From the NCBI GenBank assembly GCA_035221665.1, contig CM069160.1, positions 8,370,001-8,434,000 of the forward strand: a stretch of 64,000 nucleotides of DNA. Direction: 5' to 3'. This DNA comes from Okamejei kenojei. Lineage: Eukaryota. Under the pieces are notes generated by a model. That model was not told where the DNA came from. It made no database searches and worked only from the letters and a program-made list of their open reading frames with translations. Positions 12,811 to 32,979 of this stretch are shown here, piece after piece (position 1 is the first letter of the stretch; each line of letters opens with the position of its first letter). A program made the translations under genes and the position numbers.

Positions 12811-13463
12811 AAAAGAGGTCGTTGAGGCAAGTACCATTTCAGCATTGAAATGACACTTGGACAGGTAGATAAGTGGGAAAGGTTCTGAGGAATAAGGGCC
12901 AAACACAAGCAAATGGGACTAGTTCAGATGGAACATCTTGGCCAGAATGGACGAGATGGGCCGCAGAGCCTGTTACTGTGCTGTATGACTCCATAAGATT
13001 AAAACATCAAACTTCAAAATTAAATTCTGAGTGAAATGTAACAAAAAGTTGAAACATTGCTAAAAGAGTTTGTTGCAAAGTAGCAGAAGACTCAGCAACC
13101 AGTCACTACAATGGAGGCACACTAAGCTTGATGAATAGGAAGGAGCTGCAAATGCTGGTTTAAACTGAAGATAGACACAAACAGCTGGAGTAACTCAGCG
13201 GGTCAGGCAACATCTCTGGAGAAAATGAATAGGCGACATTTCGGGTGGAGACCCTTCTTGATGAGGTATGCAGCCACTCATCATTGTAACAGGTAGAAGC
13301 TTCATCTAGTATTCGGGTTAGGACCAGATGTTCGTCTGGAAAGGAGAAATGAGAGGAGATTGGATCAGAAATGAGAAGAGAGTTTGTCACATCATCGAGT
13401 CTTAGTGAAGGAGTTTGCGCACTCGCTCACCTGTTATCACACCTGGCCTCTCATTGTTCATCT

Positions 13464-13549
13464 CTACAATGCTCCAACGATCATCACAAGCGTAGCCATG
13501 AGCACCAGCATGGAACTAGCTCCAAATGCCTCATGTGGCCCACCAACAC
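13464..13549 (-). CDS. Candidate exon 5 of the MHC class I gene: GPI-signal-like hydrophobic C-terminus and stop
   Basis: Unique, non-repeat sequence with acceptor tttgcttgctgggcAG. In phase 1 it reads GVGGPHEAFGASSMLVLMATLVMIVGAL*. A strong donor CAG|GTGAGC lies 33 nt after the stop (exon end 13431). I found no other phase-compatible hydrophobic exon between 21141 and here. Confidence 0.68.
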
Positions 13550-16500
13550 CTGCCCAGCAAGCAAATACAGTAGAAATTAGGCAAAGTACATAGATCATGT
13601 GATAGGAGCAGAATTGGGCCATTCAGCCCATCAAGTCTACTCTGCCATGGTTGCTCTATCTCTCCCTCCTAACCCAATTCTGCCTTCTCCCCATAACTTC
13701 TGAAACCTGTACTAATCAAGAATCTATCTATCTGCCTTCAATATATCCACTGGTGGCCTCCACAGCCTTCTGTGGCAAAACATTACTCAGAGTTGCCACA
13801 CTCTTTATATGTCTTAGGATCATACAGCATGGAAAACAAACACCTTGCCCTAACTCTTTGGTCTAGTTAGTGTGGTTTATTGTCACGTGTACTGAGGTAA
13901 AGTGAAAACTCATCCTTGCCAACATATGATGCCCCATCTCAGCTAATCCTATTTGCCCATGTATCAGTCCAAGTATCTTAAATGCTGTTATAGTACCTGC
14001 CACAACTACCTCCTCTGGCATTTCGTTCCATGTACCCACCACCCTCAAATTCCCTCAGTTTCCTATTACATCTTGTCCCTCTCACCTTAAACATACACCC
14101 TCTGGTTCTTGATTCCCCTTTCCTAGATAAAAGACTGGGCATTCACTCTATCTATTCCCCTCATTTGTTCACCTCTATAAGATCACCCCTCAGACTCCTG
14201 TGCTCTAAGAAGTTCTAGCCTGCCTAACTTCTCCCGATGCTCAAACTTTTACAGGTAAGAAGCCGAAGCTCTCCCGAAGCTCAAACTTTTACAGGTAACA
14301 TCGCAGGTCAGGCAGCATCTCTGGAGAAAAGGAATAAGTGATGCTTCGGGTCAAGACCCTAATTCAGACCCTCCCCATGCTCAGTCTCTTGAGTCCTAGC
14401 AGCATCCTTGTATATCTTCTCTGCACTCATTCCATCTTAATGAAATCCTTGTTATGGCAGGGTGACTAAACCTGAACACAATACTCCAACTGTGGCCTCA
14501 CAAAATTCTTGTACAAATGTAACGTAACGTCTCAACTTCTATCTTTAATACCATGCCTGATGAAGCTCAATGTACCACAAGCTTTCTTTACTGCCCTAAA
14601 TACCTTTTTAATGCCAGTGTCATGGAACTCTGTACCTGTACTCCAAGATTCCTCTGCTCTATAATGCACTCCAGGACCCTGCCAATGATGGCACTGGAGG
14701 GGATGCAGGTGAGATTTACAGAGACTGAGTAAATTAGCCATAGAGTCATCCAGTCCAGAAAAAGACCCTTTGGCCCAGTTCGTTCTTGCTGACCAAGATG
14801 ACCCAGTTGCCCATGTCAGGAATATTTGAATAGGCTGTGGTTCTTTAGTTTATTTTTAGTTTAGAGATACAGCCATCTCTGCACATTAACACTATCCTAC
14901 ACATACACTAGAGACAATTTACAATTTTACACTTAAACCAGCCAATTAACATACAAACTTTTACATCTTAGGAGTGTGGGAGGAAACCGAAGATCTATGA
15001 GAAAATCCATGCGATCACGGGGAGAACGTACAAACTCCATACAGACAACTCCCATAGTCAGAATCGAACCTGGGTCGCGGGCGCTGTAAGGCAGCAACTC
15101 TACCGCTGCACCACCGTTCCTCTCAGGAAGCTGAAGGTTGGATTAATATGGGACCTGACAGAGTAAATAGGGAAGACCTACTGTCCTCAACAGAGCAGTC
15201 AAAACAAAATGAAAGATTGGATGTGATCGGTAGGATTCGGAGGAGAGTTTGAAACATTTTCCACAAAGGTGTGAGGGGTCTGGAAATCATTGCAGGTAAA
15301 GTGTTATGGAGACAGGAACACTGACCACATTTAAACTGGCTCAATGTGTACTTGAATTGCTGATCTTTGAACCCAATGCTCGAAGATGGGGTGACCGATA
15401 AGATACTTTAGAACTTTATTCATCCCAGGAGGGAAATTCATCTGCCAACAGTCATAAAAACACAAAATATATGAAACATAAAATTAATGTGACGAGTGGA
15501 AAGGATTGGGGCTGTGCAAAGATTGGAGAGGGTGGAGGGTGGGTGGGAGTGGAGAGTCTGTCTCAGTCTACCCCACAACAGAAGAGGTCACAGCCTCAGA
15601 ATTAAAGGACGTTCTTTTAGGAAGGAGATGAGAAGGAATTTCTTTAGTCAGATGGTGGTGAATCTGTGGAATTATTTGCCACGTAGGGCTGTGGAGGCCA
15701 AGTCAGTGGATATTTGTAAGAGATAGATAAATTCTTGATTAGTAAGGCTGTCGGGTTATGGGGTGAAGGCAGTAGAATGGGATTAGGAGAGAGAGATAGA
15801 TCAGCCAGGATTGAAAGGTGGAGTAGACTTGATGGGCTGAATGGCCTAATTCTGCTCCTATTACTTATGAAATGAGTACAGGAGGAACTCAGCGGGTCAG
15901 TCAGCATCTGTGGAGGGAAATGGACAGGCAACGCTTCAAGTCAAAACTCATGCTTAGGATTACAGCATCTGAAGTTCTTTGTGTCCATTCCCTCCCCAGG
16001 TGCTGCCTGATCTGCTGAGTTACTCCAGCACATTGTGTCTTGTTCAGGATTCCGCTGCACTTCATTGTGTCTGACCCCAAACGCCACTTGTTCCATTTCC
16101 CTGCACTGGGGCAACCTGACCGCCTGAGTTTGTACAGCGCTTTCTGTTTTCCTCAACGTCCCAGCATTTGGAGCTTCTTGTTTTTGACTGCAAACAAAGG
16201 AGATCGTGATGGGCTTCAGGAAGTGAAGAGGCACAGTCTTTTACCCAGAGTAGGGGAATCAAGAACCAGAGGAGATCAGTTTAAGGTGAGAGGGGAAAGA
16301 TTTGAGGGGCAACTTTGAGGGGCAACGTTTTTGGACAGCAGGTGGTGGTTATGAAATGAGCGGCCAGAGGAGTAAGTTAGGCAGAAATTATCACAGCTTT
16401 TAAAAGACAGTTGGATAGGAAATGTTTAGAGGTATATGGACCAAACATGAGCAGGTGGGGATGGAGTTGCTGGCGCACCTTGGCCGGCATGGGCAAGCTG

Positions 16501-17519
16501 GGCTGAAGGGCCCGTTTCCGTGCTTTAGGACTATGACTGTAACTGTGGACATAAACAAGGTCTGTTGTACATGTAGCACTGTTCTCAAAGCAAGGTTGCT
16601 CAAGATTGCTGAAGAAAGGTCTCGACCCGGAACATCACCCATTCTCTCCAGAGATGCTGCCTGTCCCACTGAGTTACTCCAGCATTTGATGTCTATTTTA
16701 GATTTAAACCAGAATCTGCATTTCCTTCCTGCACAAGGTTTCTCAAGTGTTACCACAGACCATCCGAGACTAATGATGTAACTATGCCCATATTGTATCT
16801 CTATGTCTTACTGCATGGCAACCAACGCATCTACCATTCTTACTTCATAAACCTTTGAACAAAAATAGCCTCCAAGTTGCATCAGACGGGGGATTCCAGT
16901 AAAATAAAATCAAACTGGTTTTGCAACTGGCATCAGAATGTTGATGAAGGATATTTGATCTAGTTGCTCTGTTTCTCTCACCACAAATGAAACTTAATCT
17001 TCTGAATGTTTGCAGCACATTCTGCTTTTATTTTAGATTTCCAGAAGCTGCAGTTGTATTTAATTGATTTTGAACTCTGTTGAACCACCACATGTGTAAG
17101 GAAGGACATTGTTGATATATGCAGGTAACGCCAGGAAAATACAATGGGATCTTCAAACACAATGGTGGGGCTCCAGCGTGAACTGATATAATGGGAACAC
17201 TCATTTAACATACCAGTTTTGAGAAAGTTATCGATTTCTAATTAGGCTCTGTTGCAGCTGGTAGAGTCATAGCCGTAGAGCATGGAAACCGGCCCTTCAG
17301 CCCAACTTGCCCTTGCTAACCAAGATGCCCCATCTACACCCGTCCCACCTGCCCAGGTTTGGCATATAACCCTTTCCTACCCATGTGGCTATCCAAAGAT
17401 CTGTTATGGTACCTGCCCTCGCTGCCTCTTCTGGTAGTTCTTTCCATATACCTACCATCCCCTGTGTGAAAAAGTTGCTTCTCAAGTTCTATTTCTCTTT
17501 CTCAACTTAGAACCATTTA

Positions 17520-18508
17520 CAATACAATACAATATACAATATTTATTCATTGTCATTTGAACCTGAGAGAGTTAGATAGAGCTCTAGGGGCTAGTGCAGT
17601 CAAGGGATATGGGGAGAAGGCCGGCACGGGTTATTGATAGCGGACGATCAGCCATGATCACAATGAATGGCGGTGCTGGCTCGAAGGGCCGAATGGCCTC
17701 CTCCTGCACCTATTTTCTGTGTTTCTAACCTCAATGAGGCTCAAACGGAACTGTTTCTACAGCCATACAAACAGAACAATTTCTACAAGACACACAAATA
17801 ATTAAATTCACACAAACATCCATCACGGTGAATCTCCTCCTCACTGTGATGGAAGGCAAAATCTTTTCTCTCCCCTGTGTTCCATTTTTCTCCCGCTGTT
17901 AAAGCCCTAGGCGGGCGATGGTAAGTCCCACGGCCGTTGAGGCCGCGCTGGGCGATGTACGGCCCTGCTCCAGGTCTTAATGTCTCAATGTGGGAGCCCC
18001 CCGGAAGGCGTTGGCATGTCCCGCGACCGTTAAAGTCGCGCCGGGCGATGTACGCCCCCGCGACACAGGCGGGAGAGGTTTTGTTGCGGGAGCTCTGAAA
18101 AACGGTCTCCCACCAGGCCCCCGCAAGCTCCCGATGTTCCTTTCCACTGGGCCTGCGCCTGGAGCCTCCAAGCTCCGGAGTCGGGCCTCAGCAGCGAGCC
18201 ACCACCTTTCCCCACGCTCCGAGGCCGACCAGCCCCACGATGGTACGTAGTCCGCAGGCTTCACGACTGGAGCCCCAGGTCGTTCCGGTTGGAGGCCGCT
18301 CCACGGTACTAGGCTCCAACGACAACGGAGACCCGACAGGAAAAAGGTCGGGTCTCCCGTGCAGGGAAGAGATTTTAAAAGTTCCCCCCGCCCCCCACAT
18401 ATACATAGCCAAAAACAGTGTAAAAGAACACAACAACTACATTTCACTGGACAAAAAAAAAAGTCAGACAGACTGCAGGGTCCGCTGCAACATGAGTCAC
18501 GCCCCCAA
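17520..18508 (-). mobile_element. GC-rich non-autonomous retroelement family with microsatellite tail
   Basis: Related blocks at about 25620-26225, 39810-40560 and (partial) 42050-42440. The first three share a cactgtgatggaaggc-like motif and a (TTGTA)/(TGAA)/(TCTTG)-type tail. Confidence 0.5.
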
Positions 18509-21140
18509 CTGAATTTGTTCTTGATTCCCTTACTCTGGTTAAAAGACTATGCATTCGCCTTAACGTTTCCCCTCATGATCTGACACACCGCTGTAAGATC
18601 ACCCCTCTGCGTCCTGCGCTCTATGGAATAAAGTCCTAACCTGCCCCACCTCTCCCTGTAACAGGCCCCAAAGTCTTAGCAACATCCTCAGAAATCTTCT
18701 CAGTACTCATTCCAGCTTAATGACACCCTTCCTAGAGCAGGGTAACGGGGTGGAGCTGCTGTCTCAATGCGACAGCGACCCGGGTTCTATCCTGATACCT
18801 GGTGCCAACTGCGTGGAGTTTGCGCATGCTCCCTGTGACTGAGCGGGGTTCCTCCGGGTGCTCCGGTTTCGGCGAACATCCCAAAGACATGCGGGATTGC
18901 CCCCAGTGTGTAGGGAGTGGATGAGAAAGTGGATGGGATAACATAGAAACGACGTGAGTGAGTTTAGTTGAGCTTAGTGGAGTTTAGTATATTGTCTGAG
19001 AAAGTGAATGAATAGCTTTTTGATGCATGATAAAGTCTGATTAAAGATAGTCTGAGGATTGGAGGAATGAGTGATCTGTGGTCAGCGTGGACTTCGTAGG
19101 CAAAGGGCTTGTTTGCATGCTGTGTCTGCCAATCAATTAAAAATGTTAAGTATAACAATTAACTACAGATGCTGGTTTACACTGAAGATAGACACAAAAT
19201 ATTAGAGTAACTCAGCAGGACAGGCAACATCTCTGGAGAAAAGGAATAGGTGACGTTTCGGGTCGAGACACTTTATCAGATTGGTGTCAAAAATATTTCT
19301 TATTTTGGGCTGGATATTTGTCCGACAGCTCAAAGGTAAGTTAATGCTGGGTCTATAAGGATGTCTGTAGACATAATAGCAGTTTCTCAAATTATGACAG
19401 ATGTAGATTTGGTGGAGAGTGAGAATTTCTTTTCCCAGAATGGAAAGGACAAAGATTAGAGGGTATAGCTTTAAGGTGAGAGGGACAGGCTTTAAAGGAA
19501 GAAGAAGAAGGGTATCGGCCCGAAACGTTGCCTATCTCCTTCGCTCCATAGATGCTGCTGCACCTGCTGAGTTTCTCCAGCATTTTGTGTACCCCCAGGC
19601 TTTAAAGGAGATGTGCGGAGCATGTTTCTTTTTTAAACATAGGGGAGTGGTGGGTGCCTGGAATGCACAGCCAGGGGCTGTGGTGGTGAGGCAGATGTGA
19701 TAGAGGTATTTAGGAGGCTTTTATATCACCACATGGATATGCAGAAAATGGAGCTATGTGGTTCACATGCTGGCAGAGGAGTTTAACTGGCATTCAATAC
19801 GATAGAAGGTTATTTATCCCAGGAGGGAAATTGGTCTGCCAACAGTCATAAACACATCAAGATACATGAAACATGGAATTAAAGTGACTAGTGGAAACGA
19901 TTGTTGATGTTCAAAAATTGGGGATGGAGGGAGGAGGGGGGGAGGGGGGAGGGGAGTCAATCTACCTTACGACAGAAGTGGGAGGAGTTATAGTTTGGAA
20001 GCCACAGGGAAAAAAAGGATCTGTACTGCAAATTGGTGGAACTAGTCTGTTGCTGAAGGTACTTCTCAGGTTGACCAGTGTGTCACGGAGGGGGTGAGCT
20101 GTACTGTCCAAGATGCTTTGCAGTTTGAGGAACATCCCTCCAAGACCATCTCCCACGAATCCAACTCCACCCCCAGGATGGAGCCAGCCTTCCCAGCACA
20201 CGGCAGCGAAGAAGACGGCACTGGCCACCACCAATTGGTGGGACATCTGCAGCATCCTACTGCAGACGTTGAAGGAGCCTCATATTCAGCATGGACATTG
20301 AGGGCTGAGGGTCAGTTCCTGTACTATACTGTTCTATGTTTCATGTCATTCAAACCCCATGTGTTCCTTCCCCATAAAATACGGTGAATTCCCCAATATT
20401 GCCAGACTTCCACGAAAGATGCTCCGAGTCCACGGTGACCATCGGTCACCCGTTCACACTGAGCTCATAAGTCCTAGGAGCAGAATAAGGCCATTGGCCT
20501 ACCAAGTCTACTGTGCCATTCATTCATGGCTAATCTATCTTTCCCTCTTAACCCCATTCTCCTGCCTTCTCCCCATAACGCGTGATACGCTTACTCATCA
20601 AGAATCTGTCAATCTCCGCCTTTGTGAATATCCATTGATGATCTCCACAGCCGTTTGTGGCAATGAATTCCACAGATTCACCACCCTCTGACTAAAGACA
20701 TTCCTCCTCATCTCCTTTCTAAAGGCAAGTCCTTTTATTCTGAGGGTATGGCCTCTGGTCCTCAACTCTCCCACTAGTGGAAACATCCTCTCCACATTCA
20801 CTCTATCCAGACCTTTCACAATTCAGTACGTTTCAATGAGGTCCCCCCTCATCCATCTAAACTCCAGTGAGTACAGGCTCAGTGCCTTCAAACAATCATC
20901 ATATGTGAGCCCAATCATTCCTAGAATCTTCCTCGTAATACTTCTCTGGACCCTCTCCAACGGCTGCACATCCTTCTTCAGAGGAAGGGATGTTTCCTTA
21001 AAAATATCCATTGACTTGGCGTGCACGGCCTTCTGTGGCATTGAATTCCACAGATTCACCACCCTCCAACTAAAGAAATTCCTCATCTCCTTTCTACAAG
21101 CAGGAGTGAAGCAGATTGTGGACAACATACAGTGACTTAC

Positions 21141-21422
21141 CTCCACTAAGTGTCATTGTCAGCGTCTCTGACAGGCTGCTGTGCTGGACCTGACAGCTGT
21201 ACATCTTCGGATCTTGGCCGTGTAGCTCGATGAGCAGTTCCATCCTGTACGTGTCATCGTGGTTTGGTAGAAGGATCTCGTTTATGCCTTTGGAGACGGC
21301 CTGCCCATTTCTCAGCCAGGTGGCGTTGATGGCGCGGGGGTAAAAGGGAGTGATGACGCACCGGAGACCCTCGCCTGTGTCAGCCGTCAGCTCCCTTTTC
21401 AACACTGTCACCCCTGGAACAA
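21141..21422 (-). CDS. Non-classical MHC class I heavy chain, exon 4 (alpha3, Ig C1-set domain)
   Basis: Acceptor ctccccAG and donor G|GTAAGT, 282 nt. Encodes VVPGVTVLKR...LRCVITPFYPRAINATWLRNG...LLPNHDDTY...YSCQVQHSSL...LSG, with the C1-set motifs C..FYP..I..W and YxCxVxH. Confidence 0.95.
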
Positions 21423-21529
21423 CTGGGGAGGAATGGAGAGTAACGTCACTAATTTAGCACAGTGGACATTATCTTACAGATGGGGATTATGCACACCAGC
21501 CTTGCTGTCTCACCATTACACTCACAAAC

Positions 21530-22180
21530 TAGTTAGCTCGTTCATGAAACATGGTGGAGTACATGCCCCACTCAGTATCAATTGTGCCAAAGTAGAAATA
21601 GTTCAGATCTTCAAGTTCTTGGCATTAGTATTACCAACGATCTATCACAGACCAACCGCATTGATACAACAGCCAAGAAGGCATACCAAGGCCTTTACTA
21701 CCTTAGGAGACTCAGGAAATTTGGCATGACTCCAATGATTCTTACAATCCGCTGCAGAAGCCCCATACTGTCACTGCTTGGTTTGGGAACAGCTCTACCC
21801 AAGACCACAAAAGATTACAAAGAGTTGTAGATATAGCCCAGACCATCATGCAGTCCAGACTCCCCATCACTGACTCCATCTACATTTCACGCTGCCACAG
21901 AAAAGCAGCCAACACAATCAAAGACTTGTCCCACCCTCGGTCATTCCTTCTTCTCCCTGCTCCCGTCGGGCAAATGGTACAAAGGCTTGAAAGCGTGCAT
22001 CACCACCACCACCTCTGCTACCAGGTTTCTGAGCGGTCCTTCCATAAGCTGGAGTACTGTCCAATTCACCTCTACCCCATTGGATTCTGTCTCTTGGACT
22101 GATGAACTGTATCTTCCCCTTAGCACTATCTATTGTACTTGAGTTTAACTTTATTATATTTACATACAGTATAATCTGAT
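21530..22180 (+). mobile_element. Rex1/Babar-type LINE 3' fragment in MHC intron 3
   Basis: Degenerate translation FKFL.., KKAYQGLYYLRRLRKFG and IKDLSHP. Confidence 0.7.
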
Positions 22181-23234
22181 CTATCTCTCCATCCTCACCC
22201 CATTCTCCTGCCTTCTCCCCATAACCTCAGGCACCCTACTAATCACTGGAATTTAGAAGGATGAGAGGATATCTTGTAGAAACATATAAAATTATAAAAG
22301 GACTGGACAAGCTAGATGCAGGAAAAATGTTCCCAATGTTGGGGGAGTCCAGAACCAGGGGCCACAGTTTAAGAATAAGGAGCAAGCCATTTAGTACGGA
22401 GACGAGGAAACACTTTTTCTCACAGAGAGTTGTGAGTCTGTGGAATTCTCTGGATACTTTTAAGAGAGAGCTAGATAGGGCTCTTAATGATAGCGGAGTC
22501 AGGGGAGGCCATTTAAAACTGAGATGAGAAAAAAACGTTGTCACCCACAGAGTTATGAATTTGTGGAATTCTCTGCCACAGAAGGTAGTGGAGGCCAATT
22601 CACTGGATGAATTTAAAAAAGAGTTAGATAGAGCTCTAGGGGCTAGTGGAATCAAGGGGTATGTGGGAGAAGGCAATCACTGGTTACTGATTGTGGATGA
22701 TCAGCCATGATCACAATGAATGGCGGCGCTGGCTCAAAGGGCCAAATGGCCTCCTCCTGCACCTATTTTCTATAATTCAAATCAAAAAACTGTCTATCTC
22801 TGCATTTTTAAAAAGTCCACTGAATTGGCCTCTACAGCCTTCTGTGGCAAAGAATTCCACAGATTCACCACCCTCTGATTAAATACATTTCTCCTCATCT
22901 CATTCGTAAAACAATTCTGAGGCGGTGACTAGTCCTAGACTCTCCCACCAGTGGAAACATCCTCTCCATGTCCACTCTATCCAAACCTTTCACTGTTCTG
23001 CATGTTTCAATCAGGTCCCTCCTCATTCTTCTAAACTCCTGCGAGTACAAGCCCAGTGCTGGAAAATGGTGATCATAGATTAACCCACTCATTCCTGGGA
23101 TCAATTTTGTAAACCTCCTCTGGACTCTCTCAAGAGCCAGCACACGCCGAAAATTGCTCACAATTGACCAGCAAATCGCTTGCCATCCCAGGTCAAAAAT
23201 TCCCTCTTTGCCCCTGATCAGCAGACAGAATGTT

Positions 23235-24125
23235 AAATCCCTCACCAACCCAGATCAGGAACCATTACAATCCTGGACCAGGTTATCATTCACTGTCCAG
23301 AGAAGGAGATCTCTCACCGTCAGATCATAAGCTCCCTCACCATCCTAGATCATAGATCCCTCATTGTCCCAGATCAGAAGGCCTCTGTCAATTCTGGATC
23401 AGGATATCATTTACCGTCCAGACCGTGAGATTCCTCACTGTTCAGACCAGAAGATCCCTGACCACCAAGTCAGTGGATATATTTAAGGCAGTGATAGATA
23501 GATGTTCAAGAAGGAAGTGCAGATGCTGGAAAATCGAAGGTAGATAAAAGTGCTGGAGAAACTCAGTGGGTGCGGCAGCATCTATGGAGCGAAGGAAATA
23601 GGCAACGTTTCGGTAGAAAGGGTTCTCAATTCTGAATTTTGAAGAAGGGTTTCGGCATGAAACGTTGCCTATTTCCTTCGCTCCATGGACGCTGCTGCAC
23701 CCGCTGAGTTTCTCCAGCACTTTTGTCTACCAGTGATAGATAGATTCTCAATTAGTACGGGTGTCGGAGGTTATGGGGAGAAGGCAGCAGAATGGGGTTA
23801 GCAGGGAAAGATAGACCAGCCATGACTGAATGGCAGAGTAGACTTGATGGGCCGAATGGTCTAATTCTGCTCCTATCACTGATGATCTTGATCAGAAGCT
23901 CCCTCACCATCCGCGATTGGGAAATCGTCCCAGATCAGTGCTCCCTCACCATCATGGATGGGAGCTCCCTTGTTGTCTGGGTCAAGAGACACCTCACAGT
24001 CCCAGAGTGGAAGCTCCCTCACTACACTATATCGGAGCTCCCTCACCTCCCTGGATCAGAGCTTCCTCACTGCCCCAAATGGGTGCTCCCACACCTTCCC
24101 GGATCATAGCTCCCACTCCGTCACA
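23235..24125. repeat. Degenerate ~24-bp tandem repeat (cccagatcagaagctccctcacca-like), interrupted by a CR1/Penelope insert
   Basis: Visible recurring gatc..gagctccctcac units immediately 3' of the alpha2 donor. Confidence 0.6.
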
Positions 24126-24159
24126 CACAGGGGTTTAAGTACTGAGAAGTCCTACCTAC

Positions 24160-24429
24160 CTCTCCTCTCGAGTGCTGCGTCACCAAGCCGCAGAGCTTTC
24201 TGCAAGTCTGGAATGCAGCTGCTGGTCACTGCTTGAAGTACAGCATTATTAAAGAAAGTCTGTAGGTCCTGTGGATTGTTCAATAATGTAAGGATACCAG
24301 TGGCAGAACAGTTCGCTGCGACCAGATCACAGTCAATCTCACCGATGTCTTGGATGCCAAACTTTAGAAACAGATGGATCATATTTTCAGACTGTGTGCA
24401 GCCCCAAATCCCCTGGAAGTAGCTGATAT
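24160..24429 (-). CDS. Non-classical MHC class I heavy chain, exon 3 (alpha2 domain, divergent)
   Basis: Acceptor ccttacAG and donor G|GTAGGT, 270 nt, open, phase 1-1. Encodes DISYFQGIWGCTQSENMIHLFLKFGIQDIGEIDCDLVAANCSATGILTLLNNPQDLQTFFNNAVLQAVTSSCIPDLQKALRLGDAALERR. It has QxxxGC (C101), CxxxLxxxLxxG (C164) and the typical LERR end. Confidence 0.9.
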
Positions 24430-24989
24430 CTGTAAGGAACCAATTGTCATTAATGAGAAGCCATTCCCTATTGTAGATTGGTTATTGCATGTGAACCAAT
24501 CATAGTAGAGTAGCATCATTAACCCCACCTTACTGTATGCTTTATATTAACACCCACTTCGTACATTAAGTAGTCTTGGAAGCGGTAGTGATGAATTAAC
24601 AACTAACAACCTGCTGTACCGCTATACTATGTGTTACAATTAAAGATGACTTTAAACTCCAGGCCTGTGTAACATAATCATTTACACCTACCAAACACGG
24701 AAATGCGACACGCACTGTGTGACCACGAGATGCAGGGAGCAACAGACTGCAGTGAGGGAATGATGCTAGAGCCGGGGCTGAGGGTGGAGAGAATGCAGTG
24801 TTGTCGGTGGTGGTACAGCTCACAATGTCTCAAACGATCTGTGATCACGGTGAGCAAATGTGTACAGTCAGGGTGAGTGGGTACACAGGGGGATGATCAT
24901 GGCGAGGGGCTGTGTGTGCACTCACATCATTGTGTGCTAAGCAGGGGATCAAATAGGAGAGGGTGTACCGTGTATCATTGTGGGCAGAG

Positions 24990-25600
24990 CAGGGGATTAC
25001 AGCGAGAAGGTGTATTGTGGATCAGTGTGTGTATAGGGTAGGGTTTTACACTGAGAAGGTGTACTGTGGATCAGGGTGTGTATAGGGTAGGGGTTTACAG
25101 TGAGATGGTGAATTGTGGATCAGTGTGTGTATAGGGTAGGGGATTACAGTGAGATGGTGTACTGTGGATCAGGGTGTGTATAGGGTAGGGGTTTACAGTG
25201 AGATGGTGAATTGTGGATCAGTGTGTGTATAGGGTAGGGGATTACAGTGAGATGGTGTATTGTGGATCAGTGTGTGTATAGGGTAGGGGATTACAGTGAG
25301 ATGGTGAATTGTGGATCAGTGTGTGTATAGGGGAGGGGATTACAGTGAGAAGGTGTATTGTGGATCAGGGTTGTATAGGGTAGGGGATTACAGTGAGAAG
25401 GTGTATTGTGGATCAGTGTGTGTATAGGGTAGGGGATTACAGTGAGATGGTGTATTGTGGATCAGTGTGTGTATAGAGTAGGGGATTACATTGAGAAGGT
25501 GTACTGTGGATCAGGGTGTGTGTAGATTAGGGGATTACAGTGAGATGGTGCACTGTGGATCAGGGTGAGTATAGAGTAGGGGTTTACAAAGAGATGATGT
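24990..25600. repeat. 49-bp minisatellite in MHC intron 2
   Basis: Unit GGGGATTACAGTGAGATGGTGTATTGTGGATCAGTGTGTGTATAGGGTA, about 12 copies. Decayed copies extend to about 24840, 26235-26330 and 26830-27085. Confidence 0.9.
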
Positions 25601-26326
25601 GCATTGCATCATTGTAATTCTAATTGTAATTCATTCATTCACCAAGTATGTAAAAACATGCAAAGAATTTGATTTGCCATTCAGTCATACCAAAAAAAGC
25701 AACAAGACACATGAAACAACATAAAAATTAACATAAACATCCACCACTGTGATGGGATGGAAGGCAATAGCGTATTATCTTCTTCCCTGCTTTTTCTCTC
25801 GTGGTCGAGGGGCAGTCGAACCATCCGCAGTTGGGCTGATCGAAGCTCCCGCAGCTGGAGATGAAGCTCCCGCGTCGGGGCGATCGAAGCTCCTGCAGTT
25901 TGAGCTCCCGAAGTCGATCCCTAACCAAGGGACCATGATTTCCACGATGTTAAGTCCGCAGGCTCCCGCAGTTGGAGCTCCCGCAGTCGATCCCTAACCA
26001 AGAGACCGCCAGCTCCACGATGTTAGGCCGCAGTGTGGACGGATTTACGATACGGAAAAAGTCGCATCTCCGACGAGGAAAGAGACAAAAATGTTTCCCC
26101 CATCCCCCACATAATACAAACTGAAGATACAATAACACATACATTTAACAATGGACTAAAAACAACAAAAGAAGAAACGGACGACAAGGACTGTTGGCGA
26201 AGCTGCCATCGTACGATGCCACCCGCTATTAATCCATTGTGTGTATAATGCAGGGGATAGTGAGAGATGGTGTACTGTGGATCCGTTTATACAGTGCAGT
26301 GGATAGTGAGAGATGGTGTACTGTGC

Positions 26327-26823
26327 ATAGAAACATAGACAATAGGTGCAGGAGTAGGTCATTCGGCCTTTCGAGCCTGCACCGCCATTCAATATGATCA
26401 TGGCTGATCATCCAACTCAGTATCCCGTACCTGCCTTCTCTCCATACCCTCTGATCCCTTTAGCCACAAGGGCCACATCTAACTCCCTCTTAAATATGGC
26501 CAACGAACTGGCCTCAACTACCTTCTGTGGCAGAGAATTCCAGAGACTCACCACTCTCTGTGTGAAAAGTGTTTTCCTCATCTCGGTCCTAAAAGACTTC
26601 CCCCTTATCCTTAAGCTGTGACCCCTTGTTCTGGACTTCCCCAACATCGGGAACAATCTTCCTGCATCTAGCCTGTCCAACCCCTTAAGAATTTTGTAAG
26701 TCTCTATAAGATCCCCCCCTCAAACTTCTAAATTCCAGCGAGTGCAAGCCGAGTCTATCCAGTCTTTCTTCATATGGAAGTCCTGCCATCCCAGGAATCA
26801 GTCTGGTGAACCTTCCCTGTACT
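26327..26823 (-). mobile_element. CR1 LINE 3' fragment
   Basis: ORF 26417-26680 (DRLDAGRLFP...FTQRVVSLWNSLP), with tail. Confidence 0.85.
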
Positions 26824-27349
26824 CAGTTTATACAGGGCAGGGGATAGTGAGAGATGGTGTACTGTGCATCAGTGTGGGCAAAGCAGGGGATCACAGTGAG
26901 ATGTTTTACTACGCATCATTGTGCATAGAGCAGGGATTACAGTGAGTGATGATGTACTGTACATCCGTATGTGTATAGTGCAGGCGATAGTGACAGAGAG
27001 AGTCTACTGTGCATCATCGTGGGCAGAGAAGGGGATCACAGTGAGAGATGGTGTACTGTGGATCAGTGTGTCTCTAGAGCAGGGCGATCGCATTGAGACT
27101 GAAGTTGTCGGCATGTTGCTGCCTTACAGCGCCAGAGACCCGGGTTCGATCCTGACAATGAGTGTACGGTCTTTGTACGTGCTCACTATGACCATGCCGG
27201 TTTTCTCCAGGTGCCTCCAGTTTCCTCCCATATTCCAAAGCAGGGAAAGGAATTTCTGCTTCGTCATCGGATCCATCTGATAGCGGTTATTTTGGCCATG
27301 TGAAATTTACTGTGAGCCTGAGAGGTGAGAGGGGCACGAAGACACATAC

Positions 27350-27598
27350 CAAGCATTGGGCCAAATATCCTCAATTGTTCAGAGACAGTCTTGTGAATGG
27401 TGTCTGCGATCTGCTTCTGCCGTGTCCAGTATTCCGCCGTGAAGCCGTTCGCAATCCACTGCTGCCTGGGTGCCACTTCTTCGAGGGAGCTGTCGTAGTA
27501 ATCTATCTGCAGATCATCCAACATCCCAACCCTGGCGAAGGTTGGCAGGTCAGGAATGCTGAGGGAGTAGGTGGCGAAATATCTCAAGCTGTGGGAAT
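27350..27598 (-). CDS. Non-classical MHC class I heavy chain, exon 2 (alpha1 domain)
   Basis: Acceptor ttgctcAG and donor G|GTATGT, 249 nt, phase 1-1. Encodes DSHSLRYFATYSLSIPDLPTFARVGMLDDLQIDYYDSSLEEVAPRQQWIANGFTAEYWTRQKQIADTIHKTVSEQLRIFGPML, with the class I alpha1 hallmarks SHSLRYF, VGxLDD, YDS, PRxxW and EYW. Confidence 0.93.
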
Positions 27599-27680
27599 CT
27601 GAGCAAAGGACACAAGTAAAGAGTGTTAGAAACATACCAAACAAAAAGGTCGAATGCCCAGAGAATACCCATCAGGTGAA

Positions 27681-27982
27681 GGGCTGCACGGTGGTGTAGC
27701 AGTAGAGCTACTGCTTTACAGCGCCAGAGACCCAGGTTCAATCCTGGCTACGGGTGCCTGGCTGTACGGAATTTGTACGTTCACCCCGTGACCTGCGTGG
27801 GTTTTCTCCGATATCCTCGGTTTCCTCCCACCATCCAAAGACGGACAGGTTTGTAGGTTAATTGGCTTGGTATAAATATTAAATTATCCCTAGTGTTTGT
27901 AGGTTAGTCTTAATGTGCGGGGATCGCTGGTCGGTGCCCCGAAGGGCCTGTTTCTACGCTGTATCTCTATACTAAACTAAAA
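27681..27982 (+). mobile_element. Full-length HE1-like SINE adjacent to the alpha1 acceptor
   Basis: GGGCTGCACGGTGGTGTAGC...GGTTCAATCC B box...CTGTATCTCTA(CTAAA)n tail. Confidence 0.8.
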
Positions 27983-29289
27983 TATTAAAAGAGCCTGATG
28001 GAATAAGTTAGGGGTTAGAATTATCATTGTCAGGTGTACCAAGGTACAGCACAAAGTTTTGTTTTGGATGCTATCCAAACAGACCAGGCATACTATACAT
28101 AAATACAATTAATTCAAATTGAGTACAACAGATAGAGCAAAGGGGATATTGCAGAAAATATGGTTTACACTTTACATTTCAGAGATATAGCCCTTTTAGG
28201 AAACAGGCCCTTCGGCCCACCGAGTCTGTGCCGACCAGCGATCATCCAATACACTAGCAGTATCCTACACGCAAGGGCCAATTTTCAATTTTACCAAAGC
28301 CAATTAACTGACAAACTGTAGCACCCGAAAAAACCCACGTGGTTTCAGGGAGAACGTACAAGCTCCGTACAGACAGCACCCGTCGTCAGTCTCTGGCGCT
28401 GTAAGGCAGCAACTCTACCGCTTCGCCACTGTGCCACCCTGCCCAGCATCGAGTTAATAAAAAAGGAGCTGCAAATGCTGGTTTATACCGAAGATAGACA
28501 GAAAATTGCTGGAGCAACTCAGCAGATCAGGGAGCATCTCTGGCGAAAATGGATTGGTGATGTCTTGGGTCGGGGCCCTTTTTTAGATTGATCGTAAGTG
28601 GAGTGGGGGTGGGGGGAACTGGAAGCAAGAAAACATCAGGCCAAATCAGGACTGGCAACATATGACCTCAGGCAGGGTGGTTCCCTGATAGGGCAAGAAT
28701 GGCCTATCTTTAGTTCTTGGCATTGACAAGCAAGAATTTCATTGTCCTATCTGGGACACATGACAATAAAACTCTCTTGACTCTTGACTCTCTTGTAAGT
28801 GTAACAGTTCCATGAACAAAGTTCAACGTATGCAATGTGGTAAAGGTCAATCGGACAGTACGCTAGCTTAAGGAAGGACTGCTCAGAAACCTGATAACAG
28901 AGGGGATGAAGCTGTTCCTGAGCCTGGTGGTGCGTGCTTTCAAACTTCTGTACCTTCTGCCAGATGGGAGTAGGGAGAAGGAGGATATGAAAGGTTTGAT
29001 CAGGCAGGATGTCTGTGATAATGAAGGCTGATCTTCCAAGGCACTCTGAGCTATAGATGTCGAATACTCTCCACTTAGAGTCATCGAGTCATTCAACACG
29101 GAAACAGGTCCTTCGGCCCAACTTGTCCATGCAAACCAAGATGCCCCATACAAGCTAGTTCCATTTGCCTGCATTTTCCCCAAATAGTCATAGTCATTCA
29201 GCACAGAAACAGGTCCATCAGCCCAGCATGCCCTTGCTGAGCAAGATATCCCACCTGCCCGCGTTTGGCCCATATCCTACCAAACCTTT

Positions 29290-29856
29290 CATTGTCATTG
29301 AGTGATACAGTATGGAAACTGGCCCTTCAGCCCAGCTTGCCCACATCGGCCAGCATGTCCCGGCTGCACTAGTCCCACCTACCTGAGCTTGGTCCATATC
29401 CCTCCAAATTTGTCCTAACCATATACCTGTCTAACTGTTTCTTAAATGTTGGGACAGTCCCAGCCTCAACTGCTTCCTCTGGCAGCTCGTTCCATACACC
29501 CACCACCCTTTGTCTGAAAAGGTTACCAAGCAGATTCCTATTACATCTTTTCCCCTTCACCTTGAACCTAAGTATTCTGGTCCTCGATTCCCCCACTCTG
29601 AGCAAGAGACACTGTGCATCTACCTGATCTATTACCCCTCATGATTTTGTACACCTCTATAAGATCACCCCTCATCCTCCTGTGCTGGAACGAATAGGCA
29701 TCCATCCTACTCAACCTCTCCCTATAGCTCAGGCCCTCTTGTCCTGGCAACATTCTCATAAATCTTCCCTGAACCCTTTCAAGCTTGACAATATCTTTCC
29801 TATAACATGGTGCCCAGAACTGAACACAATACTCTAAATGCGGCCTCACCAACATT
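29290..29856 (-). mobile_element. CR1 LINE 3' fragment
   Basis: ORFs 29568-29855 (RPHLEYCVQFW) and 29369-29605. Confidence 0.85.
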
Positions 29857-32800
29857 CCTATCCGATTGTCTTATATGTGTTGTTGTTCCTGCATCAACTA
29901 CCTCCTCTGGCAGAATGAGTGCACCTCCAACCTGCAGACACCATCCCAGAATAAACAGCCCCCCTCCCCCCTGTGTTTGCTTTCTGTGCCCCACTATCAC
30001 TAACAGCCCTTGTTCAAGAAGCAGTACAAGCTGGGCCGGCGCAGCTGTGCAGCAGGTTTATAGCGCCAGGTGACTCAGTGTGGTCTGAAGGACCCATTTC
30101 CATGCTGTATCTCAAAATAAACTAAAACTTTCCACGCAAAAGGGTGACCAAAACTGAACATAATACTCCAATGTCGCCACACCTGCGCCTTGTACAGCTG
30201 TAACATAACATGACAACCTTTTTTTTTTACATTTCAAAATAGACTTTATTCATATGATAAACATATCCAATACATGACCCTCGCGGAAAATCCATCCGAC
30301 ATTTTCGGAGGCTACACAAATTGGTCAATACAGTTTATACATCTTTTCCTAATCACAAATCAGTGCCCACCCGTGCCACTCATGTGGCACACTGGCGTGG
30401 ATACCTTCCCTTATTTTGAGGGGACATCTCCACCATACCATGTCCCCAAAAGGCGAGTACACTGGCTCAATGCACTGTGGCATGGTTGATTGTATCCATG
30501 TGTAGTTTCGTTTCCAGTTTACTGTTCGCAGATACAGCGCGGAAACACTTACCGGCCCACACAGATTGCTGGAGTAGCTAGTAAAAATTTGATGGGCCAA
30601 CAAGTCCGTGCTGATAGGCGATCCCCGAGCACTAACACTACCCTACACACGCCAGCGAAATGTACGATTTTACCAAGCCAATTGGCCCACAAACCTATAT
30701 GTCTTTGGAGTGTGGGAGGAAACCGGAGCAGCCGGAGTAAGCCCACGCAGGTCACGGGGAGAACGTACAAATTCTGGGCAGGCAGCGCCCGTACTCAGGG
30801 TCGAACCCGGGTCTCTGGCGCTGAAAGGACGCAAGTCTGCTGTTGCGCAGGCATGGCGTCCAAAGTAATATTCTTTACTTTGATAGGATAGCACGCAAAC
30901 GTAACTTTTCACTGCACCTCGTGACAATATGACATATGTGACAATAATAAACTAAACTAAGCAAACATTTAACTAAAATTTCATAACCGACCAGGAAATA
31001 TTCCATTCACCACAAGCAACCATCACAGGTTCAGTGCACAAAGCAATCTCCCTGCAAACACATAGACAGATACATAGATATAGACAATAGACAATAGGTG
31101 CAGGAGGAGGCCATTCGCCCCTTCGAGCCAGCACCGCCATTCACTGTGATCATGGCTGATCATGATAGGAAAGGTTTAGAGGGACAAAGGCCAAATGTGG
31201 GCAGGTGGGACTAACTTGGATGGGACATCTGGGTTGACATGGACCAGTTGGGCTGAAGGGCCTGTTTCTGTGTTGTTTGACTGGTTGACTCTAAAGGAAG
31301 CATTTTAAGAAATGGGTTAGTGTTAGAGTTAAGAATGGTCTTGACCCGAAATGTCCAGAGAAGTTACCTGTCCCGCTGAGTAACTCCAGCTTTTTGTGTC
31401 TCTTTTCAAGAAATGACCAGCCATGCTACCATGTTAAATTAAATTGGTAATTAGGCCCAGACAGGATGATGGATAAAATGAACCATCCGTGCCCAGGGAG
31501 ATGTGATGAAGCTGTTAGTACATTGCATCCCAGTGTGGATAGAGACCTTCCCCCAGTGCATGCAGAGCACTGCTTGCCCAGTTCATCCCACTGACAGCGT
31601 CTAGGTCTCACACTGACACACTGACTGAACACTGCAACTCTGTCTCTGCACCATAACCTCTGACCAACCTCTCGAAAATGCACAGCCCACTAACAGTGCA
31701 GCACTCCCTCGGTCCCCGTCTGACCATGTTATGCTCCGACACTGGGCATTGTAAAGCTCACTCAATACTCAGCCACAACACACAAGGTCAAAACCTGCCC
31801 GAACCACCCATTCCAGTCCCTCAATACTCAGTCCCTCCATACTCAGTCCCTCAAAACTAAGCCACAACACACAAGGTCAAAACCTGCCCGAACCACCCAC
31901 TCCAGTCCCTTAGATAGACACAAAATGCTGGAATAACTCAGCGGGACAGGCAGCATCTATGGAGAGAAGGAATGGGTGACGTTTTGAGTCAAGACCCATC
32001 TTCACACCATGAATAACACCCATTCAGAGATTCAGCCTGTCCCGCTGAGTTACTCCAGCATTTTGGTTTAAACCAGCAAGCAGTTCCTCCCTACACTCTA
32101 GTCTAGCCCCTTCTTCCTCATCCCTCATACTCTGAATTGAATTGAACGATACAGCATGGAAACAGGCTATTCGGCCCATCAAGTCGACACTGTCCATTGG
32201 TCATCCATTTACACTAGTTCTATGTCATACCACTTTCTCAACCACTTAACCAATCTACCTACAAACCCGCACGTCTTTGGTGTCTAAAAAACAAAGAGAA
32301 GAGAATGGACAGGCAACGTTTCGGATTGGGAACCCTTCTTAGAATCACACTGCACAGAAACGGACCATTCGACCCAACTCGTCCATACCAAGATGAGCCA
32401 TCTAAGCTATTCCCATTTCTCCGCATTTGGTCCATATCCCTCTCAACCTATCCTACCCACTCACCTGTCCATGTGTCTTTTAAATACTGTTACTGATTCT
32501 GCCTCATCTACCTCCGCCGTCTGAAGAAGGGTTTCGACCCAAAACGTCACCCGTGTCTTCTCTCCAGCGATGCTGCCTGTCCCGCTGAGTTACTCCAGCA
32601 TTTTGCGCCTACAGTTTAAACCGGCATCTGCAGTTTCTTCCTACATACTTCCTCTGGCAACTCATTCCGTGCACCCACCATCATCCGAGTGAAAATGTTG
32701 CCCCTCAGGTTCCTATTAAATCTTTCCCCTCTCACCTTATGCCTTCCGGTTCCCGATTTTCCTCCCCTGGGTCAGAGCTTGTCCACTTCCCTCCACGGGT

Positions 32801-32903
32801 GCTGCCCGACCCGCTGAGTTTCTCCTGTTATTTTCTCGAAGAATACAATTGGCTTTTCCAAATGCAATCCTTGCCATTCGCCACCCCACAACCACTGTCT
32901 TAC

Positions 32904-32979
32904 CTGCGTGGTCTCCCGACACAGGGCAGAGAGAAAAGACGGCGAACAGGAGTGATACAGGTACGTTGTAACTTTCCAT
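32904..32979 (-). CDS. Non-classical MHC class I heavy chain, exon 1 (signal peptide)
   Basis: ATG at 32979 in a strong Kozak context (GCCGCCGAGATGG). Encodes MESYNVPVSLLFAVFSLCPVSGDHA with a hydrophobic core. Ends in a phase-1 donor CAG|GTAAGA. Sits at the edge of a CpG-rich island. Confidence 0.85.

What the first reader, a model, noticed from the sequence alone, without database searches (positions are those of the whole stretch)
13431..32979. Intact, highly divergent MHC class I gene that appears to be GPI-anchored and non-peptide-binding
Seen: five phase-1 GT-AG exons (76+249+270+282+86 nt) splice into an uninterrupted 320-aa protein. The ORF track shows only pieces of it and misses the last exon. 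The protein is leader-alpha1-alpha2-alpha3 followed by ...TLSG-GVGGPHEAFGASS-MLVLMATLVMIVGAL*: small residues (S-G-G, candidate omega site), a short polar spacer, a ~15-aa hydrophobic end and no cytoplasmic tail. Established: this is the layout of a GPI-attachment signal. GPI-linked class I-like molecules are known in mammals (Qa-2, MILL, ULBP/RAE-1), and several non-classical class I lineages (UBA, UCA, UDA, UEA) are described in cartilaginous fish. Inference: this may be an undescribed GPI-anchored class I lineage in an elasmobranch, possibly a lipid-binding molecule or a stress ligand for NK/innate T receptors.
Basis: partly seen in the sequence, partly recalled or inferred. Interest (0 to 1): 0.9.

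Follow-up and report, generated by a model that had tools for sequence, protein, structure and literature searches.

The report
Skate UFA gene with GPI-like tail
This is an intact, transcribed skate copy of UFA, a shark and ray MHC class I-like gene whose structure is already solved, and its protein ends in a short greasy tail with no cytoplasmic part, which probably marks it for a lipid (GPI) anchor.

Summary
Five minus-strand, phase-1, AG/GT-bounded exons (76+249+270+282+86 nt) are at the stated coordinates. Spliced contigs from 3 samples of one study carry the last coding exon with its TAG and no indel.

The claim of an undescribed lineage does not hold. All three ectodomain exons match PDB 8gm8_A best. 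Foldseek titles that entry "shark nonclassical MHC CLASS I, UFA". RefSeq models exist in 8 batoid and at least 7 shark species. The window groups with the skate orthologues.

The tail reading is strengthened:
- 49 of 55 lineage proteins end, like this one, in a 13-20 residue hydrophobic stretch with 0-4 residues after it.
- Classical relatives carry 25-33 further residues.
- The end fits the remembered layout of a GPI signal. No predictor was available and nothing was tested at the bench.

The five alpha2 peptide-terminus anchors are replaced and the alpha2 helix is uncharged and hydrophobic. This agrees with the reported CD1-like lipid binding of UFA.

No paper I could search mentions a GPI anchor for UFA. 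Earlier notes of this scan cover this same window and UGA copies elsewhere, but not UFA on other DNA.

The parts
32904..32979 (-). Exon 1: start codon and leader peptide (76 nt, ends in phase 1, donor CAG|GTAAGA)
   Evidence: It translates to a 25-residue leader with a hydrophobic core. It is 88% identical to the Amblyraja and Leucoraja orthologues.
27350..27598 (-). Exon 2: alpha1 domain (249 nt)
   Evidence: One search gives the splice sites. Pfam MHC_I, 1.8e-11; best PDB match 8gm8_A, 2.7e-19; 82% identical to Amblyraja P0179.
24160..24429 (-). Exon 3: alpha2 domain of the UFA type, with four cysteines and no peptide-terminus anchors (270 nt)
   Evidence: 8gm8_A at 8e-10, the only match below E = 0.9; matches only 3 (plus 1 borderline) of the 150 representatives found with alpha1. 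Searches cover the cysteines, the anchors and the helix make-up.
21141..21422 (-). Exon 4: alpha3 Ig C1-set domain (282 nt)
   Evidence: C1-set, 4.2e-13; 8gm8_A at 3.1e-27, next hit 2.8e-15; runs X1-X4 hold 0.83-1.00 of its sampled words.
13464..13549 (-). Coding part of exon 5: connecting piece, candidate omega site, hydrophobic C-terminus and TAG stop (13466-13464)
   Evidence: One search gives the translation; contigs X2 record 15, X3 record 23 and X4 record 30 cover it with 0 gaps; the same end is found across the lineage.
13431..13463 (-). 3' untranslated end of exon 5, with two alternative donors: CAG|GTGTGA after 13443 and CAG|GTGAGC after 13431, which are 21 and 33 nt past the stop
   Evidence: One search gives the sequence. 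X2 and X3 contigs end this exon at 13443. The X4 contig skips 95 nt, and the tool places the pieces at 13427/13331. I read this as the canonical pair 13431|13430 and 13336|13335, uncertain by 4 nt.
13336..13430 (-). Intron in the 3' UTR (95 or 107 nt)
   Evidence: table 8. The depth of bin 13328-13524 in X2, X3 and X4 equals what the spliced contigs alone contribute (my arithmetic), so no contig covers this intron.
13204..13335 (-). 3' UTR exon, as far as the contigs reach. They stop inside a high-copy repeat, so the true transcript end is not known.
   Evidence: X1 record 8 and X4 record 30 reach 13204, and X2 record 15 reaches 13230. Acceptor TTTCCAG|ACGAAC.

Best explanation
The locus is the single, intact, transcribed copy in this skate of UFA, a non-classical MHC class I lineage shared by sharks and rays.

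Shown here:
- The five-exon structure.
- A spliced mRNA that keeps the stop codon.
- Membership of the UFA lineage, by sequence for all three domains and by fold for the orthologue.
- Loss of the alpha2 peptide-terminus anchors.
- A lineage-wide C-terminus made only of a short linker and a 13-20 residue hydrophobic stretch.

Inferred:
- The heavy chain pairs with beta2-microglobulin through its C1-set alpha3 domain.
- It holds a hydrophobic, probably lipid, ligand in a groove lined by uncharged helices.
- Its C-terminal hydrophobic stretch is a GPI-attachment signal. It would be cut near the conserved S/G-G-V-G motif and replaced by a GPI anchor.
- The molecule would then sit in the outer membrane leaflet with no cytoplasmic sorting motif, and could be shed.
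- It would sample ligands in the secretory pathway or at the cell surface and not through tyrosine-motif endosomal recycling.

The last coding exon looks like a former transmembrane exon shortened by a stop that was fixed before sharks and rays split. The downstream intron survives in the 3' UTR, 21-33 nt after the stop.
For: Gene model.

Domains.

UFA identity:
- 8gm8_A is the best PDB hit for alpha1 (2.7e-19), alpha2 (8e-10, the only real hit) and alpha3 (3.1e-27).
- titles 8gm8 'shark nonclassical MHC CLASS I, UFA'. It ranks first for the model of the Amblyraja orthologue P0179.
- P0178, the nurse shark 265-aa 'MHC class I protein', lies inside the shark clade of the domain trees.
- The window's exons group with the skates, with SH-aLRT support of 89 (alpha1), 97 (alpha2) and 99 (alpha3).

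Transcription and the stop: 3 samples of 1 study.

The tail:
- 19 of 19 full-length lineage rows end at the same alignment column. The classical row P0034 runs on through the rest of its membrane span and a tail beginning YRKK.
- 49 of 55 lineage proteins have 0-4 residues after their best 13-residue hydrophobic window. Five classical-type relatives have 25-33 residues after their best 19-residue window.
- In rays and sharks the hydrophobic run after a conserved proline is only 13-15 residues, too short for a membrane-spanning helix.

The groove:
- T143, K146, W147, Y159 and Y171 equivalents are replaced by N, gap/P, Q, A and A. The numbering is recalled.
- The alpha2 helix has 4 of 39 charged residues and mean hydropathy +0.26. 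The classical P0034 has 13 of 40 and -1.01.

Literature: UFA is CD1-like in its binding region (PMC10751288, passage). A crystal structure and mass spectrometry suggest lipids (PMC12562908, passage, given there as a personal communication).
Against: - No GPI predictor and no biochemical test were available. The omega site is chosen by eye from remembered rules.
- In skates the moderately hydrophobic run is 20-21 residues long (best 21-residue window has mean hydropathy 2.14). It could in principle span a membrane as a tail-less anchor.
- Several orthologues carry a K, R or E within the last five residues, which is not typical of GPI signals.
- Lipid binding is taken from two secondary mentions. 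It was not shown for this protein.
- Foldseek lists no CD1 among its 46 listed rows, so 'CD1-like' is functional at most.
- The model folded was the orthologue, not the window's protein.
- Contigs drop rare isoforms. Narcine has alternative ends without the hydrophobic stretch (P0169 and P0197).
Confidence: 0.65

Rival explanations
1. Same gene and lineage, but the hydrophobic end is not cleaved. UFA would be a type I membrane protein with a short span and no cytoplasmic tail.
For: In the window's protein and the other skates, the run from A/F-G-A-S to the end is 20-21 residues with mean hydropathy about 2.1. The segment aligns with the first two thirds of the classical membrane span. AlphaFold draws a helix at 296-315 of the orthologue, at pLDDT under 50.
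Against: In rays and sharks the run after the conserved proline is only 13-15 residues. No basic stop-transfer residues follow it. Small residues (S/G-G-V-G) lie 9-13 positions before the hydrophobic run across the lineage, as a GPI signal needs (recalled rule).
Confidence: 0.22
2. One reading: an undescribed class I lineage of elasmobranchs.
For: Pfam does not recognise alpha2. No paper in the searchable library describes UFA in detail.
Against: PDB 8gm8 (UFA, released 2024-11-27) matches all three domains. RefSeq models exist in at least 15 species. UFA is named in PMC10751288 and PMC12562908.
Confidence: 0.02
3. The tail-less end is a recent frameshift, a pseudogene feature or an assembly error in this genome.
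For: After the stop, the +2 frame stays open to the donor at 13431. The splice-defined exon is 119 nt, one short of a phase 1-1 exon of 120 nt.
Against: Contigs from three samples show 0 gaps in this exon. The stop lies at the same alignment column in 19 of 19 full-length orthologues from sharks and rays.
Confidence: 0.02
4. The main product is a soluble, secreted molecule, and the hydrophobic end is incidental.
For: Narcine isoforms X2 and X3 end without a hydrophobic stretch (P0169 and P0197). Retention of intron 4 in the window would add 15 residues and a stop (ORF 21094-21411).
Against: The hydrophobic end is conserved in 49 of 55 proteins. It is the form seen in every contig that crosses the exon here.
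Confidence: 0.05

Closest known systems
UFA, shark non-classical MHC class I (PDB 8GM8, nurse shark)
   Same: All three ectodomains match it best. It shares the alpha2 type with the extra cysteine pair. The domain trees follow the species tree.
   Different: The crystallised construct stops at residue 265, before the tail (P0178), so it says nothing about anchoring. The window's protein is a batoid orthologue. Its Amblyraja counterpart P0179 is 45% identical to the nurse shark chain over the whole length.
UGA, shark non-classical MHC class I (PDB 9CH4)
   Same: It is the second-best fold match and a good alpha1 match (1.7e-12). It is said to be the other CD1-like lineage of sharks and rays (PMC12562908).
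   Different: It does not match the alpha2 exon at all. Earlier notes of this scan place UGA copies 3.6-3.7 Mb away and describe a CD1b-like sorting tail (not tested by me).
CD1 of tetrapods, especially CD1a (recalled: CD1a lacks the tyrosine sorting motif)
   Same: A hydrophobic groove without peptide-terminus anchors. Lipid cargo is reported for UFA.
   Different: It is not a close relative by sequence or fold: no CD1 appears among the 46 Foldseek rows, and CD1c matches only alpha3. CD1 has a membrane span and a cytoplasmic tail.
Qa-2 (H2-Q7), MILL, ULBP and RAE-1: GPI-linked class I-like molecules of mammals (recalled; MILL2 listing only, PMC6193965)
   Same: A class I-like ectodomain followed by a short hydrophobic end without a cytoplasmic tail.
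   Different: They are unrelated lineages with independent origins. GPI linkage has been shown experimentally for them, but not here. NCBI's automatic name 'H-2 ... Q7 alpha chain-like' for P0151 is a best-hit label, not evidence.
Classical shark class I, UAA (PDB 6LUP; P0034-type proteins)
   Same: The exon plan, the leader, the start of alpha1 (SHSLRYF), Y7 and Y59, the C1-set alpha3 domain and the canonical alpha2 disulphide.
   Different: The alpha2 anchors are lost. The end of alpha1 is four residues shorter. There is an extra cysteine pair. The membrane span is cut short and there is no cytoplasmic tail.

Membership tests
UFA lineage (elasmobranch MHC-Ib) | Closest sequence relative in all three ectodomains is a named UFA | tested here: met
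   8gm8_A is the top hit for alpha1, alpha2 and alpha3. The entry is titled UFA.
UFA lineage (elasmobranch MHC-Ib) | Lineage-specific alpha2 domain | tested here: met
   The alpha2 exon matches only 8gm8 in the PDB. It matches 3 (plus 1 borderline) of 150 alpha1-selected representatives. The extra cysteines are present in 21 of 25 and 20 of 21 aligned lineage members.
UFA lineage (elasmobranch MHC-Ib) | Groups with UFA orthologues in a tree | tested here: met
   Domain-wise trees: the window groups with the skates, inside a batoid clade, beside a shark clade that holds 8gm8. Only one outgroup was used (classical P0034). No named UBA, UDA, UEA or UGA rows were included.
UFA lineage (elasmobranch MHC-Ib) | Fold closest to the UFA crystal structure | tested here: met
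   rank 1, E 1.4e-26, TM 0.64/0.76. This is for the model of the Amblyraja orthologue P0179 (pLDDT 72.5), not the window's own protein.
UFA lineage (elasmobranch MHC-Ib) | Lies in the MHC-Ib cluster with UDA and UEA (PMC10751288) | not tested
   The window holds no other class I gene. Earlier notes place class I genes 10-36 kb beyond its end, which I did not check.
UFA lineage (elasmobranch MHC-Ib) | Binds lipid | not testable with these tools
   There is only indirect support: an uncharged, hydrophobic alpha2 helix and secondary mentions in papers.
Classical peptide-presenting class I | Conserved residues that hold the peptide termini | tested here: not met
   Y7 and Y59 are kept. The equivalents of T143, K146, W147, Y159 and Y171 are replaced. 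The region around position 84 is deleted. The numbering is recalled.
Classical peptide-presenting class I | Full membrane span followed by a cytoplasmic tail | tested here: not met
   the stop comes directly after the hydrophobic stretch.
GPI-anchored proteins | N-terminal signal peptide | tested here: met
   The leader exon has a hydrophobic core and small residues before the mature SHSL start. This is by inspection; no predictor was run.
GPI-anchored proteins | C-terminal signal: small residues at omega and omega+2, a polar spacer, a hydrophobic end, nothing after it | tested here: inconclusive
   The layout fits by eye. S-G-G or G-V-G is followed by a spacer of 6-12 residues, then 15-21 hydrophobic residues. 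The rules are recalled, and NetGPI and PredGPI were not available.
GPI-anchored proteins | Release by PI-PLC, or a chemically shown anchor | not testable with these tools
   A bench test is needed.
CD1 | Sequence or fold nearest to CD1, and a tyrosine-based sorting tail | tested here: not met
   No CD1 appears among the 46 listed Foldseek rows. There is no cytoplasmic tail.

The most novel reading that the evidence does not exclude
UFA as a whole lineage is GPI-anchored, and has been since before sharks and rays diverged. That would make it the oldest known GPI-linked class I molecule and a lipid-binding one.

Together with UGA, which earlier notes describe as carrying an endosomal sorting tail, cartilaginous fish would split lipid sampling between a surface or raft-resident, sheddable presenter and an endosome-recycling one. 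This would parallel CD1a against CD1b-d in mammals and would have arisen independently.

No paper I could search says this. The primary UFA paper, if it exists, was not available to me.
Probability: 0.35. Interest if true: 0.6.

Novelty: new member of a known kind. Interest (0 to 1): 0.35.

Why it matters
The gene itself is an ordinary orthologue of a lineage that is already named, annotated in many genomes and solved by crystallography. It does not add a new kind of MHC molecule.

What may be worth a specialist's attention is the anchor. Every full-length UFA aligned here (19 of 19 rows), from eight batoid and at least seven shark species, ends in a short hydrophobic stretch with no cytoplasmic residues. 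The crystallised construct leaves this part out.

If the end is a GPI signal, a CD1-like lipid binder of the oldest jawed vertebrates would reach and leave the cell surface by a different route from CD1. It would have no adaptor-dependent endosomal recycling and would sit in rafts. It could also be shed. That bears on where it loads its ligands and which cells see it. The question can be tested directly with a transfection and PI-PLC assay.

Tried and rejected
Frameshift or assembly error in the last exon. I considered this because the splice-defined exon is 119 nt and another frame stays open after the stop. I rejected it because the contigs show 0 gaps and 19 of 19 orthologues stop at the same column.

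A weak donor T|GTAGAG at 13469 that would bypass the stop. None of the three contigs that cross the exon uses it. Rare isoforms cannot be excluded from contigs.

Another membrane-span exon in intron 4 or downstream. A crude scan gave 5 candidates, none resembling a class I connecting piece or span. The scan's pyrimidine filter also missed the real exon, so it is a weak negative.

Paralogues in the window. tblastn of each exon against the window found only the exons themselves.

UGA-type proteins among my hits, to test the sorting-tail contrast. A motif search found none, so that contrast rests on earlier notes only.

Papers. 8GM8 is in no held paper. PMC7002201 and PMC8454915 (the UDA and UEA papers) are not held.

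Not done:
- NetGPI and PredGPI (not available).
- dN/dS (no orthologous DNA).
- Any search or fold of the joined 320-residue product.
Full report
**What is in the sequence.** On the minus strand there are five exons:
- leader, 32979-32904 (76 nt)
- alpha1, 27598-27350 (249 nt)
- alpha2, 24429-24160 (270 nt)
- alpha3, 21422-21141 (282 nt)
- last exon, 13549-13464 (86 nt with the stop)

Every acceptor is AG and every donor GT. All junctions are phase 1, and each exon reads open in that phase. The arithmetic gives 320 residues. The window has no N and no second class I gene (tblastn of each exon). The rest of the window is retroelement debris.

**What the exons are.** Pfam calls alpha1 MHC_I (1.8e-11) and alpha3 an Ig C1-set domain (4.2e-13). 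It does not recognise alpha2 or the tail. Against all PDB chain sequences the best match of every ectodomain is 8gm8_A:
- alpha1, 2.7e-19. The next hits are 6lup_A at 1.2e-12 and 9ch4_A at 1.7e-12.
- alpha2, 8e-10, with no other match below E = 0.9.
- alpha3, 3.1e-27, next hit 2.8e-15.

**Is it transcribed, and how does the message end?**
- Four runs of one study (three samples; X1 and X2 share one) hold 0.83-1.00 of the sampled words of the alpha3 exon. The tool is unsure whether they are RNA.
- Laid on 8600-14500, their contigs are spliced.
  - X2 record 15 (403 nt) lies on 13551-13443 and then on 13335-13230.
  - X3 record 23 (556 nt) lies on 13443-13551, with 320 more letters upstream.
  - X4 record 30 (1358 nt) lies on 13551-13427 and then on 13331-13204, with 1105 more letters upstream.
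  - X1 record 8 (1346 nt) ends on 13335-13204.
- The depth of bin 13328-13524 in X2, X3 and X4 is exactly what these contigs alone contribute (my arithmetic). No contig covers the small intron, so the material behaves as RNA.
- The last coding exon shows 0 gaps and 0, 0 and 1 other letters. The TAG at 13466-13464 is therefore in mature mRNA.
- Two donors are used, after 13443 (CAG|GTGTGA) and after 13431 (CAG|GTGAGC). The second is my reading of a 95-nt skip that the tool placed 4 nt aside.
- Both donors lie after the stop, by 21 and 33 nt. By the remembered 50-55 nt rule this keeps the message out of nonsense-mediated decay.
- I could not see the upstream letters of the contigs, so the alpha3-to-13549 junction is inferred here from lengths. 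In other skates it is read through by a RefSeq model and by transcript contigs of 1.1-1.35 kb (cluster of P0180).

**Which lineage?**
- A search of 1.84 billion representatives with alpha1 gave 322 hits at E <= 0.001.
- Three of the 150 listed have the same architecture and the same alpha2 type: P0009 (Hemitrygon akajei), P0010 (a form without alpha2) and P0014 (Cetorhinus maximus).
- Word-based searches with P0009 and P0014 added models from the following species:
  - Batoids: Hypanus, two Mobula species, Pristis, Narcine, Amblyraja and Leucoraja.
  - Sharks: Carcharodon, Mustelus, Pristiophorus, Heterodontus, Chiloscyllium, Heptranchias and Scyliorhinus.
  - They also returned the 265-residue nurse shark chain P0178.
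- NCBI's automatic names vary (MR1-like, CD1d-like, Q7-like, HFE homologue) and mean nothing.
- Identity of the window's exons to Amblyraja / Leucoraja is 82/78% (alpha1), 78/69% (alpha2), 88/89% (alpha3) and 89/80% (tail). The window therefore comes from a third skate taxon. It carries four extra residues in the first loop of alpha3.
- Domain-wise trees place each exon with the skates (support 89, 97 and 99). The skates lie inside a batoid clade, beside a shark clade in which the nurse shark chain is sister to Chiloscyllium (22 rows, one classical outgroup).
- I folded the Amblyraja orthologue with an alignment of 25 lineage members (pLDDT 72.5). Foldseek puts 8gm8_A first, titled 'Crystal structure of shark nonclassical MHC CLASS I, UFA', released 2024-11-27. 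It puts 9ch4_A ('... UGA') second.
- The gene is therefore the skate UFA orthologue.

**The tail.**
- In an alignment of 19 full-length lineage members and one classical relative, all 19 stop at the same column. That column is five residues before the end of the classical membrane span. The classical chain then runs on into a tail beginning YRKK.
- Over all 55 lineage proteins I held, 49 have 0-4 residues after their best 13-residue hydrophobic window (mean hydropathy 1.8-2.9).
- The six exceptions are a fragment (P0167), two alternative Narcine isoforms (P0169 and P0197), a partial model (P0176), an old hypothetical model (P0146) and the crystallisation construct (P0178).
- Many of the 49 are near-duplicates or isoforms. 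By species there are eight batoids and at least seven sharks.
- Five classical-type relatives have 25-33 residues after their best 19-residue window.
- After a conserved proline, rays and sharks have only 13-15 hydrophobic residues, too few to cross a bilayer as a helix.
- Nine to thirteen positions before the hydrophobic run lies a conserved S/G-G-V-G. This offers small residues at omega and omega+2 (remembered rule).
The comparative data make it a property of the lineage and not an accident of this genome.
- It remains a prediction. In skates the run is 20-21 residues long and could act as a tail-less span.

**The groove.** Against the classical row, Y7 and Y59 are kept. The equivalents of T143, K146, W147, Y159 and Y171 are N, gap/P, Q, A and A. 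The end of alpha1 is four residues shorter (the numbering is recalled from HLA-A2).

| Helix | Window | Classical P0034 | Nurse shark UFA |
|---|---|---|---|
| alpha2: charged residues | 4 of 39 | 13 of 40 | 7 of 39 |
| alpha2: mean hydropathy | +0.26 | -1.01 | +0.47 |
| alpha1: charged residues | 8 of 40 | 12 of 40 | 8 of 40 |
| alpha1: mean hydropathy | -0.60 | -1.27 | -0.39 |

A second cysteine pair in alpha2 is present in 21 of 25 and 20 of 21 aligned members. Heptranchias has Y and W there, close to the classical F and W.

**What is in print.**
- PMC10751288 (passages read) says UFA is a new elasmobranch MHC-Ib lineage 'very similar to CD1' in its binding region. It says UFA maps with UDA and UEA, and cites unpublished data.
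- PMC12562908 (passages read) says UFA and UGA are CD1-like, MHC-linked and single- or low-copy. It says crystal structures and mass spectrometry suggest lipids, as a personal communication.
- Neither paper contains 'GPI' or 'GPI-anchored' (listing).
- Searches found no primary UFA paper. Subscription journals are not covered, and supplements were closed.

**Mechanism and rivals.**
- My best reading is a beta2-microglobulin-associated, lipid-holding class I-like molecule attached by GPI. I put its membership of UFA at about 0.95 and the GPI anchor at about 0.65.
- The main rival is the same molecule held by an uncleaved short span (0.22).
- A new lineage, a recent frameshift and a mainly soluble product are each unlikely, for the reasons given under rivals.

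**Verdict.** Its functional guesses (GPI, non-peptide, perhaps lipid) are reasonable and now better supported. Its novelty claim fails, because the lineage is named, annotated and crystallised. Interest is moderate. It rests on the anchor, which the crystal construct omits and which I could not find discussed.

Noticed in passing
window 13431-13463: Two alternative donors are used in the 3' UTR, 21 and 33 nt after the stop. Both join to the same acceptor at 13336/13335. X2 and X3 use the first and X4 the second.
   Followed up: partly
window 21380-21400 (alpha3 exon, first loop): The window's alpha3 has four residues (within KRELTADTGEG) that the Amblyraja and Leucoraja orthologues lack (KRDKGEG). 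Rays and sharks have the longer form.
   Followed up: no
window exons alpha1/alpha2 against alpha3: Among skates, alpha1 and alpha2 differ much more (78-82% and 69-78% identity) than alpha3 (88-89%). This could reflect relaxed or diversifying change in the ligand-binding part. No orthologous DNA was at hand for dN/dS.
   Followed up: no
related proteins P0154-P0168: UFA is expanded in stingrays and manta rays. The 90%-identity clusters number at least 6 each in Mobula birostris and Hemitrygon akajei and 4 in Hypanus sabinus. Sharks and skates show one per species. Stingrays also have isoforms without alpha2 (P0010, P0153 and P0170, 231 aa).
   Followed up: partly
P0177 (Heptranchias perlo): This hexanchiform UFA has Y and W where the other members have the extra cysteine pair of alpha2, close to the classical F and W. 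The second disulphide may have arisen after the earliest shark split, or been lost there.
   Followed up: no
P0169 and P0197 (Narcine bancroftii isoforms X2 and X3): These alternative ends lack the hydrophobic stretch, which would give soluble forms.
   Followed up: no
window 43405-47286 (+): Three long open frames (504, 337 and 279 aa). The last has a tyrosine-recombinase domain (Phage_integrase, 2.8e-07). This looks like a DIRS/Ngaro-type retroelement, and a related fragment lies at 4945-5561.
   Followed up: partly
window 52648-54769 (-) and 8681-9286 (-): LINE-type reverse transcriptase frames (RVT_1, 8.5e-26 and 7.6e-14). Many short copies of the same element's C-terminal part lie inside the UFA introns.
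   Followed up: partly
window 33000-33300 (-), upstream of the start codon: The 1358-nt contig of X4 leaves about 230 letters for a 5' UTR. The region upstream of the ATG has TTTC-rich stretches and an ATTGA box. I did not test it for ISRE or SXY elements.
   Followed up: no
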